Positions 1 through 63,122 of a stretch of DNA of 64,000 nucleotides are shown in pieces. The first letter of the stretch is position 1. The number at the start of each line of letters is the position of its first letter. The translations under genes were made by a program, and so were the position numbers. The stretch lies in IMG/VR virus record IMGVR_UViG_3300046542_000227, positions 186,001 to 250,000 of that record; one strand, written 5' to 3'. A model generated the notes under the pieces. That model worked only from the letters and a program-made list of their open reading frames with translations. It did not search any database and was not told the origin of the DNA.

Positions 1-969
1 CCGGCTGCCGTAATGGAAACTCAGCTGTTCACCCCGACCATCGTCATCACCGACGTACGTCAGGCCAGCTGGATCGGCGCCAACACGCCTGAGCTGTACT
101 TCCTGGCTCTGTCCAACGCCTACCGCACTACCGCTGGTACTGCATGGGCCGGCAGCCTGCTGCCAGACGTTGCCAAGAAAGACGACCCACGCGACATCGG
201 TGCTCTGACCTACCTGACCAAGGACGCGAAGAAGACCAAAACCAAAACCGATACCTTCACCCCGGCTCACTTCGGTGAACTGATGTTCATGCTGGTTCGT
301 CCTAACCCGACGTTCCTGATCGACATCAACCCGGTCGGCGAAAACTCGGCAATCGAAAACGTCCTGCTGATGGCGGCCAGCGATGGTCCGAACCGTGAGC
401 GCGCCGTAGCGATCCTGGTATCGAGCCTCAACAACCTGACCGCTGGCCACTTCAGCCAGATCTTCGACCACACCAAGCACCACTTGATCCGCATGTACGG
501 CACCGACGTACACCGCGGCTACTACCTGGACGCACGCGAAGATCGTCACGATCTCCGTGACCTGGGCACGCTGGAAGCGCTGAACGCATCGGGTGGCAAC
601 ATCCAAGAGTTCATCGCCTACTACCGTACCATGTGCGACCAAGCGATCCACCCGGAAATCCGCCTCAAGCAGCGCGTCGGTTACGAGCGTCAGTACCTGA
701 GCCAGAACCTGGTGATCCGCGGCAAGTACCACCGTCTGGTCTGGACTCCTGAGTTCATCCTGGCGCTGGACAATGCGGTTAAAGCTGCAGGCGTATCCGT
801 CGACGTGGAAAACGTGAGCACCGTTTACGGTTCTCAGCGCTTCACCGGCAACACTGCTGTTACTCAGTTCGCTGTGGCTCAACAAGCACAGTACGGCCTG
901 GGTGCCAACGCAGGTCAGGGCGGCTACGGTCTCCCAGGCGGCGCCGGTGCTGGTACCATGATGTACTAA
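1..969 (+). CDS. chmA: Chimallin (phage nuclear shell protein, phiKZ gp54-like), C-terminal part; 5' truncated by window
   Basis: Frame open from base 1; strong high-expression codon bias; Gly/Tyr-rich C-tail; own terminator; lies immediately upstream of the NADFDGD beta' gene as chmA does in Chimalliviridae (synteny-based call). Confidence 0.75.
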   Translation, partial: PAAVMETQLFTPTIVITDVRQASWIGANTPELYFLALSNAYRTTAGTAWAGSLLPDVAKKDDPRDIGALTYLTKDAKKTKTKTDTFTPAHFGELMFMLVRPNPTFLIDINPVGENSAIENVLLMAASDGPNRERAVAILVSSLNNLTAGHFSQIFDHTKHHLIRMYGTDVHRGYYLDAREDRHDLRDLGTLEALNASGGNIQEFIAYYRTMCDQAIHPEIRLKQRVGYERQYLSQNLVIRGKYHRLVWTPEFILALDNAVKAAGVSVDVENVSTVYGSQRFTGNTAVTQFAVAQQAQYGLGANAGQGGYGLPGGAGAGTMMY

Positions 970-56667: not shown

Positions 56668-57075
56668 ATGCCCGATCCGAAAAATATATTCATCAAGGTC
56701 GATCCAGAGTGGTCCTACAACTACATTGGGTCGATCAAAGAATTCGTTCAGCTTGACCCCGGCGTATTGGCTGAGTATTACAACTTAGCCTGCGCCTACC
56801 TCACCCTACGCCACAACTTTGTCACTGGCCACATAGACAACGTTGGTTACTCCAATCAGATCTACAGCCTGTTCAAGCCGTTTGAGAACAGCTCTATCCT
56901 CCACGGTGTAATATCCTACTGCACAGAGAACCTATATAGGCGTGTCCGTCCAGTGCTGGATATGTACCGGCGTATGCTCGCTCGTGTTAGTTTCTTTAAT
57001 GACGACAAAGGTGAAGTGCAGGGTTTGGTGTTCCAATACGTGGAACATTACCCCATGACCACGCTCCAGTTTTGA
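56668..57075 (+). CDS. Hypothetical protein
   Basis: 135-aa ORF. Confidence 0.65.
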   Translation: MPDPKNIFIKVDPEWSYNYIGSIKEFVQLDPGVLAEYYNLACAYLTLRHNFVTGHIDNVGYSNQIYSLFKPFENSSILHGVISYCTENLYRRVRPVLDMYRRMLARVSFFNDDKGEVQGLVFQYVEHYPMTTLQF

Positions 57076-57087
57076 ATGCACTATCCT

Positions 57088-57112
57088 TGAGAACTATATC
57101 ACTCCGGTGAAT
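57088..57112 (+). promoter_or_regulatory. Putative phage early promoter
   Basis: GAACTATATCA-CTCCG-GTGAA. Confidence 0.6.
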
Positions 57113-57133
57113 TGTAACCAAGAGGTACGCAAC

Positions 57134-57511
57134 ATGGTTCGTATAGGTGCTATGGGTATCTTCCTTTTACTGTGCCTAGGCTTTCTCTTAGCTGGCGGTT
57201 GGACAGTAATCGAAGGAGTAAAGCGGTACGCTACTAAGGGATCGCGCAAAGCAGCCCGTAACGAGAACTTGGGTCAGATCATGGTTCAGCTCAAACAAGA
57301 AGGTTTCTTTGAGCCTTCAACTGAGCCAGTGATGATCCGCAATCGGGCAATCTCTGAAGCACTCTCAGAATCCTCTAAACAGGAAGGCTTCTTCTGGGGT
57401 ATCAGTAAACGCAATATCTTCATTAAGGATAACCCTTACGAAGATCGCTTTGACACGATCCTGGTGTATGGCAATAAGAGCATTGGCTTTAACTGGCGCG
57501 GGCAGCTGTAA
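57134..57511 (+). CDS. Membrane-anchored hypothetical protein
   Basis: GAGGT RBS; N-terminal TM helix. Confidence 0.7.
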   Translation: MVRIGAMGIFLLLCLGFLLAGGWTVIEGVKRYATKGSRKAARNENLGQIMVQLKQEGFFEPSTEPVMIRNRAISEALSESSKQEGFFWGISKRNIFIKDNPYEDRFDTILVYGNKSIGFNWRGQL

Positions 57512-57544
57512 AGCTGCCTTTATGCCCTGAAAACTTGATTGCAA

Positions 57545-57575
57545 AAAATCTGAGATATATATTCTAAAGGTGAAT
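57545..57575 (+). promoter_or_regulatory. Putative phage early promoter
   Basis: GAGATATATATTC-TAAAG-GTGAA. Confidence 0.6.
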
Positions 57576-57623
57576 TAGGAGCATTAAGCGACTAATCACA
57601 TTCCCCTGTTCAGGAGTAATACC

Positions 57624-57839
57624 ATGTCCGTTATCAAATCCGCTGTTGCTAAAATCAAGCCTTTCGCTAAAGTGGCTGGCTACGCTGTTGGTGGTGTTGT
57701 AGTTGGCGGTGGTGCATACCTCGCCTACCAGGCTCTCAAAGCTGGTGGTGCAAGTGTCGCTGCTGAAGCGGTGGGTTCGGTTGCCGATGCGGCGGCCGAT
57801 GCTGTAACTGATGCTGTTGCAGCCGCGTTCCGCGGTTAA
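57624..57839 (+). CDS. 71-aa Ala/Gly/Val-rich membrane peptide
   Basis: AGGAG RBS, own promoter motif and terminator. Confidence 0.75.
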   Translation: MSVIKSAVAKIKPFAKVAGYAVGGVVVGGGAYLAYQALKAGGASVAAEAVGSVADAAADAVTDAVAAAFRG

Positions 57840-57885
57840 GGAATAAAGCATGGGGGCTTCGGCCCCCGTGTCTCTTTATCTTTTT
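57840..57885 (+). terminator. Intrinsic terminator
   Basis: CATGGGGGC-TTCG-GCCCCCGTG then T-rich tract. Confidence 0.75.
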
Positions 57886-57900
57886 GTTACTGGAGTTAAC

Positions 57901-58254
57901 ATGGAACAACAAAACCCTGACGCGGTCATCTCTCGATTGGCTGAGCGTTACCAAGAATATCGCGACACCCACACCAGCCTCAAGCCAGGTAAGATCCTGA
58001 CTGTGGTTAGGGATCACGGTAATCCACATGCGATCCCGTACGTACCTAACCCGGTCACTAGCCTTGCGGTGGTTGTGGAAGTACAGTCGGTATTCGTTAA
58101 GGTAGTGGAACGTCAGCGTGGCCTTACTGCTGAACCCCTGCGTCTCGAACAACGGGTAATGGTGATCGTGGACGGGCGACCTGACCAATCACTGTTGTCT
58201 GAATACGATTCCTGGTCGCTGTACATGCCTGATGAAATTACTTTCAGCTTGTGA
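57901..58254 (+). CDS. Hypothetical protein
   Basis: GGAG RBS, ATG 57901. Confidence 0.7.
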   Translation: MEQQNPDAVISRLAERYQEYRDTHTSLKPGKILTVVRDHGNPHAIPYVPNPVTSLAVVVEVQSVFVKVVERQRGLTAEPLRLEQRVMVIVDGRPDQSLLSEYDSWSLYMPDEITFSL

Positions 58255-58696
58255 CCTGTTCCAAGTCCCTGGTGATTGCCACGTTATCACAGTCAACTGT
58301 GTTGGCGCTATGGGTCGTGGCGTAGCGGAAGTCTTCCGGGATCGCTACATGAAGCAGTATTGGGAATACAAGAACCGCTGTAGGAAGAAACAAGTGTGGC
58401 TAGGTGTTCCTTACCTAGTCACTACTGATGATGGCCGTCATTGGCTGTTCTTCCCTACTAAGGATCATTGGCGCGGTAACTCCCAATACCACTGGATCCA
58501 TGAGGGACTGCAATACCTCGTTGACAACATCGGCGAGCCTGATTACATTCAACACGACTGGCATCTAGTATTCCCACCTTTGGGTTGCGGCAATGGCCAC
58601 CTAGACTTCCAGCACATCGCTCGGCTAATGGACATGTTTGATGGACATGTACCGAACGATATTACTCTTATCGCACCTCAGGACTACGAAATATGA
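58232..58696 (+). CDS. Macrodomain protein, DarG/TARG1-like ADP-ribosyl glycohydrolase
   Basis: [31 protein letters not shown]. Confidence 0.88.
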
Positions 58697-59130
58697 AACC
58701 TCTTCGCCAAGCAGTATACTCCAGCCGTACCGCAGACAAGTTTGTTGTTCGTCTGCCAGACGGAATGCGTGAGACTATCGCGCAACGTGCCCGAGTGCAC
58801 CATCGGTCGATGAACTCTGAGATCATTGCCGTGCTGGAAAAGGATCTGGCGATTCCGGTTGATGAAACCGCGGTCCAGATGGAGCAGCACACCAACCCTA
58901 CGGTAACTACCCCGGTGTCCATGGGTATGCTGGCGTACTACCGTTTGGAAGATACTGGCGATAAGTACTCGCTGGCTGTGATTACCGGTATCTCGGTAAA
59001 CGTGGACGACGACGTATGGGTCACCTTCGACAAGCCACCAACACCAGCGCCTGCTGGTTACTCAGGCCCTGCTGGTCCTGATGGTCGTCGTTGGATCCCT
59101 ATCGCCAACATCAAACCTTTCTTGATCTAA
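58693..59130 (+). CDS. amrZ: AmrZ-like Arc/ribbon-helix-helix regulator with unrelated C-terminal domain
   Basis: [43 protein letters not shown], nearly the Pseudomonas AmrZ N-domain. Confidence 0.88.
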
Positions 59131-59145
59131 CCCCCGGGGTGCTGC

Positions 59146-59469
59146 ATGTCGCTTGATAGCTTATTAGCTTTGTTTCAAGCGGTACAACTCGAAGCCCAAG
59201 CACACTTGGCTTTGATCTACTGTGCCAGCACCCTGACCACTTTCTCTCTGGCCTTTGTAAAGGCCTTCCAGTCACGCAACATCGTACTGGGTCACTACAA
59301 GGCAGCGTTCATTACTTCGTGGGGTGTATCTACCCTAGAGGTCGTGGGCGTGAGCCTCGTAGTAATAGGTGGTTGGTGGATTATACTCTCCTCTGGCATC
59401 GGTGGTTCTATTGGAACCCTCGTGGCCATGCATACTCACGAACGTTTCTTCAGGAAGATAAAACCATGA
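59146..59469 (+). CDS. Small multi-pass membrane protein
   Basis: Three hydrophobic segments, GIGGSIGT. Confidence 0.72.
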   Translation: MSLDSLLALFQAVQLEAQAHLALIYCASTLTTFSLAFVKAFQSRNIVLGHYKAAFITSWGVSTLEVVGVSLVVIGGWWIILSSGIGGSIGTLVAMHTHERFFRKIKP

Positions 59470-60134
59470 CTACGAACATTCTCTTTGCTGGCAGCTACAG
59501 TAGCGTCCGTCAACGAATCCAGCAAACGGATATCGTTACGGTGCAACCCAGCGCTATGTTGTCTATTCCAGCCAACGCTAATCCGTTTCACCACGATAGC
59601 TTCAGCATGGGTTCTGATCTGCCTCGTGGTTGGATGGTCATGCATGCGGGTTTTGATGACACCAATGGCTTTGAAGACATGTACTTGGTTAACACCAAGA
59701 CCGGTCAACGAATCCAACTCGACTTCGAACCCGAAACACCACAGTGGGAAGAGGCGGTCTACATCGACGAGACACCTGAACTCGATCTCTTGCAGCGCTA
59801 CTGCTGGGTGCGTCAAGGCGGTCAAGTGTTCTGGTACAACTACCAGCAGTTCCTGTTGGCTACCCTCGGCGACTCGCAACAGATGTTGGTGAAACCCACA
59901 CCACTCTACATGGTCGTGGACAAGTGGATGGTGTTGATGGATGTCCTCGCTGATCACCATCGGTTTGCGCGCTTCTGTGCATCGCATGAACCGGATCTCC
60001 AATGGTCAGCTGATACACTTAGCCAAGCCATGCGTTTGGTGGAAGCTGAAAAGCTGTTGGCTGCTGAGGGCCACCCAACCACTACTTTACCAATCCACAA
60101 GTTGGTTGATATCCGCGATCGTAGCGATTCTTGA
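59466..60134 (+). CDS. Hypothetical protein
   Basis: ATGA overlap at 59466, AGGA RBS. Confidence 0.7.
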   Translation: MTTNILFAGSYSSVRQRIQQTDIVTVQPSAMLSIPANANPFHHDSFSMGSDLPRGWMVMHAGFDDTNGFEDMYLVNTKTGQRIQLDFEPETPQWEEAVYIDETPELDLLQRYCWVRQGGQVFWYNYQQFLLATLGDSQQMLVKPTPLYMVVDKWMVLMDVLADHHRFARFCASHEPDLQWSADTLSQAMRLVEAEKLLAAEGHPTTTLPIHKLVDIRDRSDS

Positions 60135-60145
60135 TTGAAATGAAA

Positions 60146-60170
60146 CTGAGAACTATATTGTACTCTTGAG
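60146..60170 (+). promoter_or_regulatory. Putative phage early promoter
   Basis: GAGAACTATATTG-TACTC-TTGAG. Confidence 0.5.
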
Positions 60171-60216
60171 TTATGGGGCTTCCATGCCTCTAATATTAGA
60201 CCCATAGGGGATAACC

Positions 60217-60528
60217 ATGCGAGCCGCACATCACAGCTCTATGTTCTACCGAATGATCCGCACCTTCAATGGTGAGAGTGCCTTCCTGCATCGGCAAATG
60301 TACATCATCCTGGAAGAAGTAAAGACCAGTGGTTACCTCGTTAACCTGTGTGCCAACATCGAGTTCACCAAAGCGTGTATGGCATACCAGCAATCGATTG
60401 ACAAGTTGACACAACGTCAGATCAGTCCAGAGCTGGCCACTGAGATCCGCACTAACGCCACGGCGGTTGTTACACACATCCGCAACCACTTAACCGAACA
60501 CGATGTTGATTATCGTAAACTGATTTGA
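60217..60528 (+). CDS. Hypothetical protein
   Basis: AGGGGA RBS, 103 aa. Confidence 0.68.
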   Translation: MRAAHHSSMFYRMIRTFNGESAFLHRQMYIILEEVKTSGYLVNLCANIEFTKACMAYQQSIDKLTQRQISPELATEIRTNATAVVTHIRNHLTEHDVDYRKLI

Positions 60529-60539
60529 TCGAGGCTGTA

Positions 60540-60764
60540 ATGAGTGACTTCTTTGAGATGCGTGCCATGCTAGACCGTAAGAACGCTGAGAAGCGTGAGA
60601 AGAAGCTTTGTGGTCGTGTCTACCAAGCAATCGTCGTAATGCTCCTGTGCGGCGCTGTAGGGCTTCACAGCGGTATTCGTGACCTCGAACAACCAGTCGG
60701 TTATGTAACTGAAGCTTTTTCTCAGCAAAAACAACTAGTTGTAACCTTTACACCCAACCCTTAA
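60540..60764 (+). CDS. Small membrane protein
   Basis: GAGG RBS, one TM helix. Confidence 0.62.
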   Translation: MSDFFEMRAMLDRKNAEKREKKLCGRVYQAIVVMLLCGAVGLHSGIRDLEQPVGYVTEAFSQQKQLVVTFTPNP

Positions 60765-60779
60765 GCAAGAGGATTTACC

Positions 60780-61118
60780 ATGCAAGTTAAAATCGGTGGC
60801 TTCGCAGCATTCTGTATCGCCTGTGTTGTAGTGGGTGGTATCGAACGTATTACCAGTTCGATCTGTGTTTCCCGCATCGGTCGTGGGCGTAAGTTGCCTA
60901 AGCAATCGCTGTTCTGGAAAGAGTTGGCACACCAGGTCGAAGCGCTGCGTACGGAAACCCCGGACATCAGCATCGACGATCTGCGCACCAAGCTGAAAGA
61001 AAAGCTGTCGCCGCTGTATGAAAGCGCTCTGATGGAATGCGAAACACCAGAAGAGATCGAACGCTTCACCATGCAGTGGAACATGAAGCTGGAAGCACTC
61101 GGCGAACCGGCCAAGTAA
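60780..61118 (+). CDS. Membrane-anchored hypothetical protein
   Basis: GAGGA RBS, hydrophobic N-terminus. Confidence 0.7.
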   Translation: MQVKIGGFAAFCIACVVVGGIERITSSICVSRIGRGRKLPKQSLFWKELAHQVEALRTETPDISIDDLRTKLKEKLSPLYESALMECETPEEIERFTMQWNMKLEALGEPAK

Positions 61119-63083: not shown

Positions 63084-63122
63084 GGCATAGCACCCGCCCG
63101 GTTAGGGGCGGGCTTTATGCCG
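63084..63122 (-). terminator. Hairpin of repeated family
   Basis: GGCATAG-CCCGCCC-GGTTAG-GGGCGGG-CTTTATGCCG. Confidence 0.7.

What the first reader, a model, noticed from the sequence alone, without database searches (positions are those of the whole stretch)
58693..59130. Captured AmrZ DNA-binding domain with a replaced C-terminus
Seen: the first ~50 aa closely match Pseudomonas AmrZ, including the N-terminal arm ([26 protein letters not shown]). The C-terminus is an unrelated beta-rich, SH3/Tudor-like segment instead of the helical tetramerisation domain. Known: AmrZ controls alginate, flagella (fleQ), pili and c-di-GMP, and host and phage AmrZ homologues can repress CRISPR-Cas expression. 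Inference: an early gene that mimics or dominantly poisons host AmrZ, altering receptor display (superinfection exclusion) or immunity. The arm lacking the TPT insertion points to a non-aeruginosa Pseudomonas host.
Basis: partly seen in the sequence, partly recalled or inferred. Interest (0 to 1): 0.68.

Follow-up and report, generated by a model that had tools for sequence, protein, structure and literature searches.

The report
Phage AmrZ mimic with swapped tail
A soil jumbo phage carries a copy of the DNA-binding half of the Pseudomonas master regulator AmrZ joined to a small barrel domain; this belongs to a known class of phage proteins that take over host gene control, but the barrel domain has not been described before.

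Summary
ORF 58693..59130 (+, 145 aa) has an N-terminal arm and ribbon-helix-helix (RHH) domain about 79-81% identical to Pseudomonas AmrZ (PDB 3QOQ, E 3e-18; Pfam Arc, E 8e-19). All published DNA-contact residues are kept. After residue 52 the AmrZ helical tetramerisation domain is missing. An acidic linker and a five-stranded SH3/Tudor-like barrel replace it (model pLDDT 76; fold-class matches only).

It is not unique. At least 81 proteins share this head + tail design, mostly on jumbo-phage-sized contigs. They include Noxifer gp106 (60% identity, same gene order) and SM1 gp115. SM1 gp115 is the apparent orthologue of ΦPA1019 Gp53, an early protein shown in 2026 to bind host fleQ, pslA, amrZ and ftsZ promoters.

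Heads stay about 78% identical across the family while tails fall to about 27%. In an exhaustive profile search the tail turned up almost only behind AmrZ-like heads.

The host genome is a 267-kb nucleus-forming chimallivirus from a rhizosphere metagenome. The most likely role is a mimic that binds host AmrZ operators. "Early gene", "dominant poison" and the "TPT" host argument are not established. This is a new member of a known kind, with an undescribed tail domain.

The parts
58693..59130 (+). Complete gene for the 145-aa AmrZ-like protein (P0001), stop codon included
   Evidence: It is the only Arc-family gene in the 267,320-bp phage genome.
58693..58728 (+). AmrZ-type extended N-terminal arm (residues 1-12), containing Y9, S11 and R12, which correspond to AmrZ Y11, S13 and R14
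   Evidence: Alignment to 3qoq. Residue roles are from Pryor 2012. These residues are invariant in the 12 orthologues.
58729..58848 (+). Ribbon-helix-helix core (residues 13-52): a beta strand with K16, V18 and R20 (AmrZ K18, V20, R22), helix 1 with R26 (AmrZ R28), and helix 2 starting at S39-M40-N41 (AmrZ N43)
   Evidence: Pfam Arc E 8e-19. 3qoq E 3e-18. The K/V/R triad is kept in 80 of 81 tail-bearing family members.
58849..58908 (+). Acidic, poorly conserved linker (residues 53-72, pI 4.1)
   Evidence: Low pLDDT and low conservation.
58909..59127 (+). C-terminal SH3/Tudor-like five-stranded barrel (residues 73-145, pI 4.6). It ends in the family-wide (I/L)-K-P-hydrophobic motif.
   Evidence: Model pLDDT 75.8. 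Fold matches. Homology to the tails of other AmrZ-headed phage proteins: hhalign 94%, E 1.3e-7.
59032..59085 (+). Pro/Gly-rich loop of about 17 residues, specific to this subfamily, inserted before the last strand of the barrel
   Evidence: Alignment A4. pLDDT is below 50 here.
58232..58696 (+). Upstream gene for a stand-alone DarG-type macrodomain. Its TGA stop overlaps the ATG of the AmrZ-like gene (ATGA), so the two are probably co-translated.
   Evidence: Pfam Macro. PADLOC DarG E 2.3e-37 and NCBIfam DarG E 1.6e-35 over model positions 6-149 of 338. The same order occurs in Noxifer gp105-gp106.
59146..59469 (+). Downstream small protein matching PHROG 7045, which is labelled 'holin'
   Evidence: The same order occurs in Noxifer gp107.
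57848..57871 (+). Strong GC-rich hairpin followed by a T-rich tract (terminator-like), 0.8 kb upstream. It separates the gene block from the promoter-like site at 57535.
57535..57563 (+). Conserved promoter-like element (TTGATT-N17-TATATT). It is one of about nine copies in the genome, all on the + strand. Another copy at 60131..60159 closes the block.

Best explanation
The gene encodes a phage-made mimic of the host master regulator AmrZ. Its head (arm plus ribbon-helix-helix domain) forms the usual intertwined dimer. It reads the same DNA as AmrZ: GGC half-sites separated by a 5-bp A/T-rich linker, and A/T-flanked GCC sites. During infection of a soil or rhizosphere Pseudomonas it occupies AmrZ-controlled host promoters (in relatives: fleQ, psl, amrZ itself, c-di-GMP enzymes, cas genes) and rewires host transcription for the phage's benefit. 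The host's helical tetramerisation domain has been replaced by an acidic SH3-like barrel. That swap uncouples the phage protein from host AmrZ tetramers and gives it its own protein-protein interface, either for self-association or for an unknown partner. Shown here: the sequence, the domain anatomy, conservation of the contact residues, family membership and the phage type. Inferred: DNA specificity, the host chromosome as target, and the role of the tail.
For: The head is 79-81% identical to AmrZ, including the AmrZ-specific arm. All residues that Pryor 2012 shows contacting or positioning DNA are present and invariant in the orthologues. The base-contacting K/V/R triad is kept in 80 of 81 tail-bearing proteins and the others in 75-81 of 81. 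Across 3,240 pairs of family members the heads average 77.7% identity and the tails 27.0%, and heads stay 79-84% identical to bacterial AmrZ. This points to long-term selection for host-like DNA recognition. Functional precedent: 5 of 6 mobile AmrZ homologues complement a PA14 amrZ deletion, and the jumbo-phage PaBG homologue represses Csy expression. PhiPA1019 Gp53 is a 126-aa, early-expressed protein that binds 78 host sites, including the fleQ, pslA, amrZ and ftsZ promoters. SM1 gp115 has the same length and the same R15, R21, M35 and N36 positions as Gp53. Its tail matches this family's tail profile at 97%, E 6.6e-11. The tail of the window's subfamily matches the other tails at 94%, E 1.3e-7. 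Context: the gene is translationally coupled to a DarG-like macrodomain, a candidate counter-defence gene. The tail is acidic (pI 4.6), so it is unlikely to bind DNA itself.
Against: No binding or expression data exist for this protein or for Noxifer gp106. The phage encodes chimallin, so its own DNA sits in a protein shell, and in some relatives the host DNA is degraded. It is unknown whether this protein stays in the cytoplasm with the host chromosome. AmrZ needs its C-terminal tetramerisation domain in vivo (Xu 2016, as cited), and self-association of the new tail could not be shown. Expression timing is unresolved. The PaBG tail does not match the family profile significantly, so the PaBG result transfers by head only. 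The Gp53 link rests on inferred orthology with SM1 gp115, because the Gp53 sequence itself was not available.
Confidence: 0.55

Rival explanations
1. Regulator of the phage's own genes. The protein enters the phage nucleus and binds AmrZ-type operators in phage DNA. The prime candidates are the 11-mer GGCTTTATGCC sites that coincide with terminator and late-promoter junctions, where binding would gate late transcription by the non-virion RNA polymerase.
For: GGC-W5-GCC occurs 9 times in the 267-kb genome against 1.2 +/- 1.1 in shuffles, and every copy is the same 11-mer. Noxifer has 13 copies against a control of 4. The spacing and A/T linker match the amrZ1 operator GGC-AAAAC-GCC. The TATG start base of the phiKZ-type late promoter falls inside the second half-site. 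Classical phage RHH proteins (Arc, Mnt) regulate phage promoters.
Against: The enrichment has an independent explanation. It is the 3' end of a conserved terminator stem followed by the recurrent TTTATG(Y)CGTC element, which has 59 copies, only some of them flanked by GGC. PaBG and SM1 also encode AmrZ-like proteins but show no enrichment (1 against a control of 1). A phage-internal regulator has no obvious need to stay about 80-94% identical to the host protein. Import into the nucleus is unknown.
Confidence: 0.12
2. Dominant-negative poison. The head forms mixed dimers with newly made host AmrZ. A mixed dimer carries only one helical C-terminal domain, so it cannot build proper tetramers, and host AmrZ function collapses.
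For: The hydrophobic core positions of the RHH dimer are identical to AmrZ, and the substitutions fall at positions that look surface-exposed (my reading of the alignments). The tail swap removes the tetramerisation domain.
Against: This was not tested here. RHH dimers are obligate and fold on pairing, so exchange with pre-existing host dimers may be slow. Relatives complement an amrZ deletion rather than only antagonising AmrZ. Gp53 binds DNA directly and its effects depend on its DNA-contact residues. This rival can coexist with the main explanation.
Confidence: 0.15
3. A non-transcriptional RHH role. It would be either a ParG-like centromere-binding or partition adaptor, or an antitoxin-like partner of the neighbouring macrodomain.
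For: PHROG families 2685 and 795 that match the head are labelled 'partition protein ATPase'. FitA-like antitoxin RHH gives a weak Pfam hit just below its cut-off. The start codon overlaps the macrodomain gene.
Against: No ParA or ParF-type ATPase and no toxin gene lies nearby. The PHROG labels attach to short RHH proteins such as phi3 gp09, which is itself an AmrZ homologue tested by Borges et al.. The macrodomain neighbour is absent from three other subfamily contexts. The best matches by far are to AmrZ.
Confidence: 0.04

Closest known systems
Pseudomonas AmrZ (alginate and motility regulator Z; PDB 3QOQ)
   Same: The extended N-terminal arm, the ribbon-helix-helix fold and every published DNA-contact residue. 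Identity is 79-81% over the first 52 residues.
   Different: It lacks the helical C-terminal tetramerisation domain (AmrZ residues 67-108) and has an SH3-like barrel instead. It is encoded by a lytic jumbo phage, not the chromosome. It lacks the 2-residue arm insertion of P. aeruginosa AmrZ.
PhiPA1019 Gp53 / Pseudomonas phage SM1 gp115 (Samunavirus, about 93 kb)
   Same: The same two-part design: an AmrZ-like RHH head plus a homologous beta-barrel tail (tail profile match 97%, E 6.6e-11). Gp53 is an early-expressed protein that represses host promoters.
   Different: The head is only 52% identical and lacks the AmrZ arm. The tail has no Pro/Gly loop. The phage type is different (not a chimallivirus). 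Orthology of Gp53 with SM1 gp115 is inferred from length and residue numbering.
Pseudomonas phage Noxifer gp106 ('Arc-like transcriptional regulator')
   Same: A full-length orthologue (60% identity, 100% coverage) in the same gene order: macrodomain gene, this gene, then the holin-like gene.
   Different: None in kind. Noxifer gp106 is uncharacterised, but it belongs to a cultured phage with a known host (P. fluorescens SBW25), so it is the practical test object.
Mobile AmrZ homologues of Borges et al. (PaBG gp184, phi3 gp09, JBD68)
   Same: Phage-borne AmrZ-like heads with conserved contact residues. These complement an amrZ deletion and repress type I-F CRISPR-Cas expression.
   Different: phi3 gp09 has a short helical tail (81 aa). 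PaBG gp184 has a beta-rich tail that does not match this family's profile significantly (E 0.013). Phage Y12 carries a complete host-type amrZ.
P22 Arc and Mnt repressors
   Same: Phage RHH repressors. Mnt, like AmrZ, uses a separate C-terminal domain to form tetramers.
   Different: Weak sequence similarity (Mnt E 0.011). They regulate phage immunity genes and have no barrel tail.

Membership tests
AmrZ orthologue | Ribbon-helix-helix (Arc-type) DNA-binding domain | tested here: met
   Pfam PF03869 E 8.3e-19; 3qoq E 3e-18
AmrZ orthologue | AmrZ-specific extended N-terminal arm (Y11, S13, R14) | tested here: met
   Y9, S11 and R12 are present and invariant in the 12 orthologues. The 2-residue insertion of the P. 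aeruginosa protein is absent, as in other Pseudomonas species.
AmrZ orthologue | Base-contacting triad K18/V20/R22, plus R28 and N43 | tested here: met
   K16, V18, R20, R26 and N41 are present. The triad is kept in 80 of 81 family members.
AmrZ orthologue | Helical C-terminal tetramerisation domain (residues 67-108) | tested here: not met
   No similarity after residue 52. A beta-barrel tail takes its place.
AmrZ orthologue | Chromosomal Pseudomonas gene | tested here: not met
   The gene lies in a 267-kb phage genome with chimallin and split RNA polymerase genes.
AmrZ orthologue | Binds amrZ/algD/fleQ operators and regulates them | not testable with these tools
   Needs EMSA, DAP-seq or reporter assays.
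Phage AmrZ-head + beta-tail family (Gp53 / SM1 gp115 / Noxifer gp106 type) | AmrZ-like RHH head directly followed by the conserved barrel tail ending in (I/L)-K-P-hydrophobic | tested here: met
   hhalign of own-subfamily tails against 38 other tails: 94%, E 1.3e-7. An HMM of the tail hits 84 of 143 short proteins, including SM1 gp115.
Phage AmrZ-head + beta-tail family (Gp53 / SM1 gp115 / Noxifer gp106 type) | Early expression during infection | tested here: inconclusive
   An early-like promoter lies at 57535, but a terminator hairpin at 57848 intervenes. No RNA runs hold the sequence.
Phage AmrZ-head + beta-tail family (Gp53 / SM1 gp115 / Noxifer gp106 type) | Direct binding and repression of host promoters | not testable with these tools
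   Shown only for Gp53 in the literature.
Tudor / SH3-like small barrels | Five-stranded barrel with a short turn before the last strand | tested here: met
   Model pLDDT 75.8. Top structural neighbours are Tudor, chromo, BAH, KOW and integrase CTD at Z 5-6.5 and TM up to 0.76 by target. These scores fall in the range where only a common arrangement is shown.
Tudor / SH3-like small barrels | Sequence membership in a named family (Pfam Tudor, SH3, KOW, chromo) | tested here: not met
   No Pfam hit on the tail. The exhaustive profile search found no named small-barrel family.
Tudor / SH3-like small barrels | Aromatic cage for methylated ligands | not tested
   The model is not accurate enough to judge side-chain geometry.

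The most novel reading that the evidence does not exclude
In Noxifer-like nucleus-forming phages the AmrZ mimic has a second target, or its main one, in the phage's own genome. About 10 late promoters here and 13 in Noxifer are formally perfect AmrZ operators (GGC-TTTAT-GCC), with the late transcription start inside one half-site. The protein would then act as a clock that masks or marks a subset of TATG late promoters. That would supply one of the 'yet-to-be-defined' determinants of late promoter choice by the non-virion RNA polymerase.
Probability: 0.08. Interest if true: 0.8.

Novelty: new member of a known kind. Interest (0 to 1): 0.45.

Why it matters
Phages that copy a host master regulator can steer motility, biofilm, c-di-GMP and immune gene expression with a single small protein. 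Showing that many such copies share one undescribed barrel tail instead of the host's tetramerisation domain turns scattered reports (PaBG, Gp53) into a defined family with a clear question: what does the tail bind? The case is also useful because the carrier is a nucleus-forming phage. Where the protein goes, cytoplasm or phage nucleus, would show whether these phages still invest in reprogramming the host chromosome. A cultured orthologue (Noxifer gp106 in P. fluorescens SBW25) makes all of this directly testable in a harmless system.

Tried and rejected
- **Megablast of 57000-61000 against the phage collection:** no match; protein-level search was needed.
- **Full-length AlphaFold2 model on 12 orthologues:** pLDDT 53, too weak to use except for secondary structure.
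- **Complex prediction on two copies of the tail:** score 0.02, no verdict, so it is evidence neither way.
- **Strict ChIP-type motif W4-GCC-W4 in the window:** 1 site against 3.0 expected, no enrichment.
- **Exhaustive profile search with the tail:** all long hits are WD40 propellers or other repeat proteins whose scores sum many short partial matches. I rejected them as artefacts.
- **PaBG gp184 and HRDY3 tails:** they look similar by eye but do not match the tail profile significantly (E 0.013 and 0.035), so I do not count them as members.
- **BFVD and ESM-Atlas structure searches:** only generic small barrels.
- **NCBIfam:** it has no AmrZ-specific model; a true AmrZ control also hits none.
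- **PADLOC:** nothing for the protein itself.
- **Sequencing-run search:** only DNA metagenomes and no RNA.
- **Macrodomain adjacency as a family trait:** rejected, because it is absent in three other subfamily contexts.
- **Not attempted:** a tree of the 43-52-residue heads to count capture events, because the region is too short and too conserved to resolve.

Full report
**The object**

The window holds an ORF at 58693..59130 on the + strand, 145 codons with an ATG start and a TAA stop. Its ATG overlaps the TGA stop of the preceding gene (ATGA). Residues 11-52 match the Pfam Arc-like ribbon-helix-helix (RHH) family at E 8.3e-19. Among solved structures the only strong match is P. aeruginosa AmrZ (3qoq): E 3e-18, residues 1-52 against AmrZ 4-57, 41 of 52 positions identical by my count, with one 2-residue gap in the N-terminal arm. 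Pseudomonas AmrZ proteins from other species (108 aa) are 81% identical over the same stretch and need no gap. The observation as written is therefore correct and far beyond chance.

**DNA-reading residues**

Pryor et al. 2012 (PMC3325190) show how AmrZ recognises DNA:
- It reads two GGC half-sites separated by a 5-bp A/T-rich linker (amrZ1: GGC-AAAAC-GCC).
- K18, V20 and R22 make the base contacts.
- S13 and R14 in the arm, Y11 and E25 holding the arm, R28 and N43 contribute as well.

The phage protein has the equivalents with a numbering offset of 2: Y9, S11, R12, K16, V18, R20, R26 and N41. All are invariant in its 12 orthologues. The K/V/R triad is kept in 80 of 81 proteins of the wider family. 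The head is basic (pI 10.4).

**What replaced the C-terminus**

Similarity to AmrZ stops after residue 52. What follows is:
- an acidic linker (residues 53-72, pI 4.1);
- an acidic beta-rich domain (residues 73-145, pI 4.6).

A first full-length model was poor (pLDDT 53). A model of residues 66-145 on a 36-sequence alignment reached pLDDT 75.8 and pTM 0.63. It shows five strands and a short turn before the last one. Foldseek against the PDB and an independent all-against-representatives search both return almost only SH3-like small barrels: Tudor, chromo, BAH, PWWP, KOW, retroviral integrase C-terminal domain and ribosomal L24. The scores are Z 5-6.5 and TM up to about 0.75 by target, and no family stands out. 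At these scores only the general arrangement is shown. Pfam finds nothing in the tail.

**It is a family, not a one-off**

The word-indexed search gave 11 full-length orthologues at 55-98% identity, nearly all on contigs of 268-284 kb. One of them is Noxifer gp106 (60%).

Beyond them, many proteins of 110-175 aa combine an AmrZ-like head with a different-looking beta-rich tail ending in (I/L)-K-P-hydrophobic. Profile-profile comparison of the window's subfamily tails against 38 other tails gives 94% probability and E 1.3e-7 over the whole barrel core. An HMM of the merged tails hits 84 of the 143 short proteins collected. The window's subfamily differs from the rest by a Pro/Gly-rich loop of about 17 residues before the last strand.

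An exhaustive profile search of 1.84 billion representatives found the tail only behind Arc/AmrZ-like heads, apart from one 65-aa stand-alone protein. The long hits are WD40 and other repeat proteins with summed partial scores, which I treat as artefacts.

Across 3,240 pairs of family members the heads average 77.7% identity and the tails 27.0%. Heads remain 79-84% identical to bacterial AmrZ, with some as high as 94%. So the fusion is old, the tail drifts freely, and the head is held close to the host protein.

**Link to experimental work**

Borges et al. (bioRxiv 10.1101/673095) found AmrZ homologues on 14 Pseudomonas mobile elements. They showed that 5 of 6 complement an amrZ deletion and that three, including the one from jumbo phage PaBG, repress Csy expression.

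A 2026 paper (PMC13650114) characterises PhiPA1019 Gp53:
- It is a 126-aa, early-expressed, AmrZ-like RHH protein from a 94-kb phage.
- It binds 78 host sites and represses ftsZ, fleQ, pslA and amrZ.
- R15, R21, M35 and N36 are essential.

SM1 gp115, from a 93-kb relative, is 126 aa and has exactly those residues at those positions. Its tail matches the family tail profile at 97%, E 6.6e-11. I therefore infer that Gp53 has the same head + tail design. Neither paper mentions the C-terminal half.

Other phage versions have different tails:
- phi3 gp09 has a short helical tail.
- Phage Y12 carries a complete host-type amrZ.
- The beta-rich tail of PaBG gp184 does not match the profile significantly.

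**The carrier**

The window is part of a 267,320-bp virus record with terminal repeats. It encodes split multisubunit RNA polymerase subunits of the phiKZ type and a chimallin homologue (40% identity to phiKZ gp54, E 6e-115; its 3' part is window 1..969). It is thus a nucleus-forming chimallivirus. Noxifer is treated as one in a recent preprint.

The closest cultured relative, Noxifer, infects P. fluorescens SBW25 and shows the same local gene order. The DNA is found complete in a rhizosphere metagenome and in part in soil and wetland metagenomes; no RNA runs hold it. This is the only Arc-family gene in the genome.

**Local context and timing**

The gene sits in a run of small + strand genes:
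- The gene just upstream (58232..58696) is a stand-alone DarG-type macrodomain. It gives PADLOC E 2.3e-37 and NCBIfam DarG E 1.6e-35, covering only the N-terminal glycohydrolase half of the model.
- The gene downstream matches a PHROG labelled holin.
- A conserved promoter-like element (TTGATT-N17-TATATT, often followed by a conserved hairpin) occurs about nine times in the genome, always on the + strand. Copies lie at window 57088, 57535 and 60131.
- A strong terminator-like hairpin lies at 57848..57871, between the 57535 copy and the gene.

Whether the gene is read by read-through from that promoter or from a start after the hairpin cannot be decided from sequence. 'Early gene' is therefore plausible by analogy with Gp53 but not shown. 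The macrodomain neighbour is not conserved in three other subfamilies.

**Mechanism**

The best-supported reading is a mimic of host AmrZ that binds AmrZ-type operators on the host chromosome. The tail replaces the host tetramerisation module with a private protein-protein interface. The support is:
- complete retention of the contact residues;
- the strong head-versus-tail conservation contrast;
- the functional data on relatives.

Its weak points are:
- There are no direct data.
- The protein's location in a nucleus-forming phage infection is unknown.
- AmrZ needs its own C-terminal domain in vivo (Xu 2016, as cited), and the self-association test of the new tail gave no verdict.

A dominant-negative action through mixed dimers is compatible with the conserved dimer core. 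It is untested and not required by the data on relatives.

**A coincidence worth recording**

GGC-W5-GCC, the formal AmrZ operator, occurs 9 times in the phage genome against 1.2 expected, always as GGCTTTATGCC. Noxifer has 13 copies. These sites are the end of a conserved terminator stem followed by TTTATG(Y)CGTC. That element has 59 copies, mostly right after hairpins, and contains the phiKZ-type late promoter TATG, whose G is the transcription start. The enrichment therefore has its own explanation. PaBG, SM1 and phiKZ show none. I keep 'regulator of its own late promoters' as a low-probability rival and as the most novel reading not excluded.

**The TPT argument**

The 2-residue difference from P. 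aeruginosa AmrZ is real. However, AmrZ-like proteins of the P. aeruginosa phages PaBG, phi3 and SM1 also lack it, so it does not indicate the host. A non-aeruginosa host is still likely, on the grounds of the Noxifer relationship and the rhizosphere origin.

**Verdict**

This is a real and correctly described feature. Functionally it is most likely a host-regulator mimic, and it is a new and rather divergent member of an already known kind. Two things are new: the barrel tail is recognised as a conserved, AmrZ-head-specific domain shared by jumbo phages and Samunavirus-type phages, and the carrier is a nucleus-forming phage.

Noticed in passing
window 58232..58696 (+): A stand-alone DarG-type macrodomain (154 aa) matching only the N-terminal ADP-ribosyl glycohydrolase half of the antitoxin DarG (PADLOC E 2.3e-37, NCBIfam E 1.6e-35, Pfam Macro). 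It is a candidate phage counter-defence against DarT DNA ADP-ribosylation. It is conserved in Noxifer (gp105) and translationally coupled to the AmrZ-like gene.
   Followed up: partly
whole phage genome; window examples 27469(+), 31672(+), 51574(+), 63115(+), 21024(-), 39462(-), 61943(-): 59 copies of TTATG(Y)(Y)G(Y), nearly all directly after GC-rich hairpins on both strands. This is a terminator plus phiKZ-type TATG late-promoter module with an extended consensus TTTATG(Y)CGTC not reported for phiKZ.
   Followed up: partly
genome-wide; window 63111..63121 is one copy: The 11-mer GGCTTTATGCC occurs 9 times (1.2 expected) and 13 times in Noxifer. It has exactly the half-site spacing and A/T linker of the AmrZ amrZ1 operator, and the late transcription start lies inside one half-site. 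It is not enriched in PaBG, SM1 or phiKZ.
   Followed up: partly
window 57088, 57535..57563, 60131..60159 (+); genome 28973, 45737, 46190, 79302, 140455, 150889: A conserved sigma-70-like element, TTGATT-N17-TATATT, preceded by an A-rich stretch and CTGAGA. It is often followed by a conserved hairpin (GTGAATTAGGAGC ... CTAATCAC). All copies are on the + strand upstream of small genes. It is possibly the early (virion RNA polymerase) promoter class of this lineage.
   Followed up: partly
window 1..969 (+): The 3' part of the chimallin (phage nuclear shell) gene, 40% identical to phiKZ gp54 (E 6e-115). It marks the phage as nucleus-forming.
   Followed up: yes
window 57850..58254 (+): The listed ATG at 57850 lies inside the terminator hairpin at 57848..57871. 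The real start is more likely the ATG at 57898, which follows GGAG.
   Followed up: no
window 59146..59469 (+): A 107-aa hydrophobic protein matching PHROG 7045, labelled 'holin'. It lies immediately downstream and is conserved in Noxifer (gp107). It is odd to find it in a block of small non-structural genes rather than next to an endolysin.
   Followed up: no
L009:401-727 (Pseudomonas phage Y12, unverified record): It encodes a complete 108-aa host-type AmrZ, including the P. aeruginosa arm insertion and the helical tail. This is either a very recent capture or host DNA in the record.
   Followed up: no
proteins P0038, P0089, P0107 and relatives (157-174 aa, contigs of about 264-268 kb): A subgroup of the head + tail family carries a further conserved helical extension after the barrel, ending in ...ALERIAAK. 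This makes a three-part architecture.
   Followed up: no
protein P0168 (65 aa): The only tail-domain hit without an AmrZ-like head among 1.84 billion representatives. It could be a genuine stand-alone barrel or a truncated gene call.
   Followed up: no
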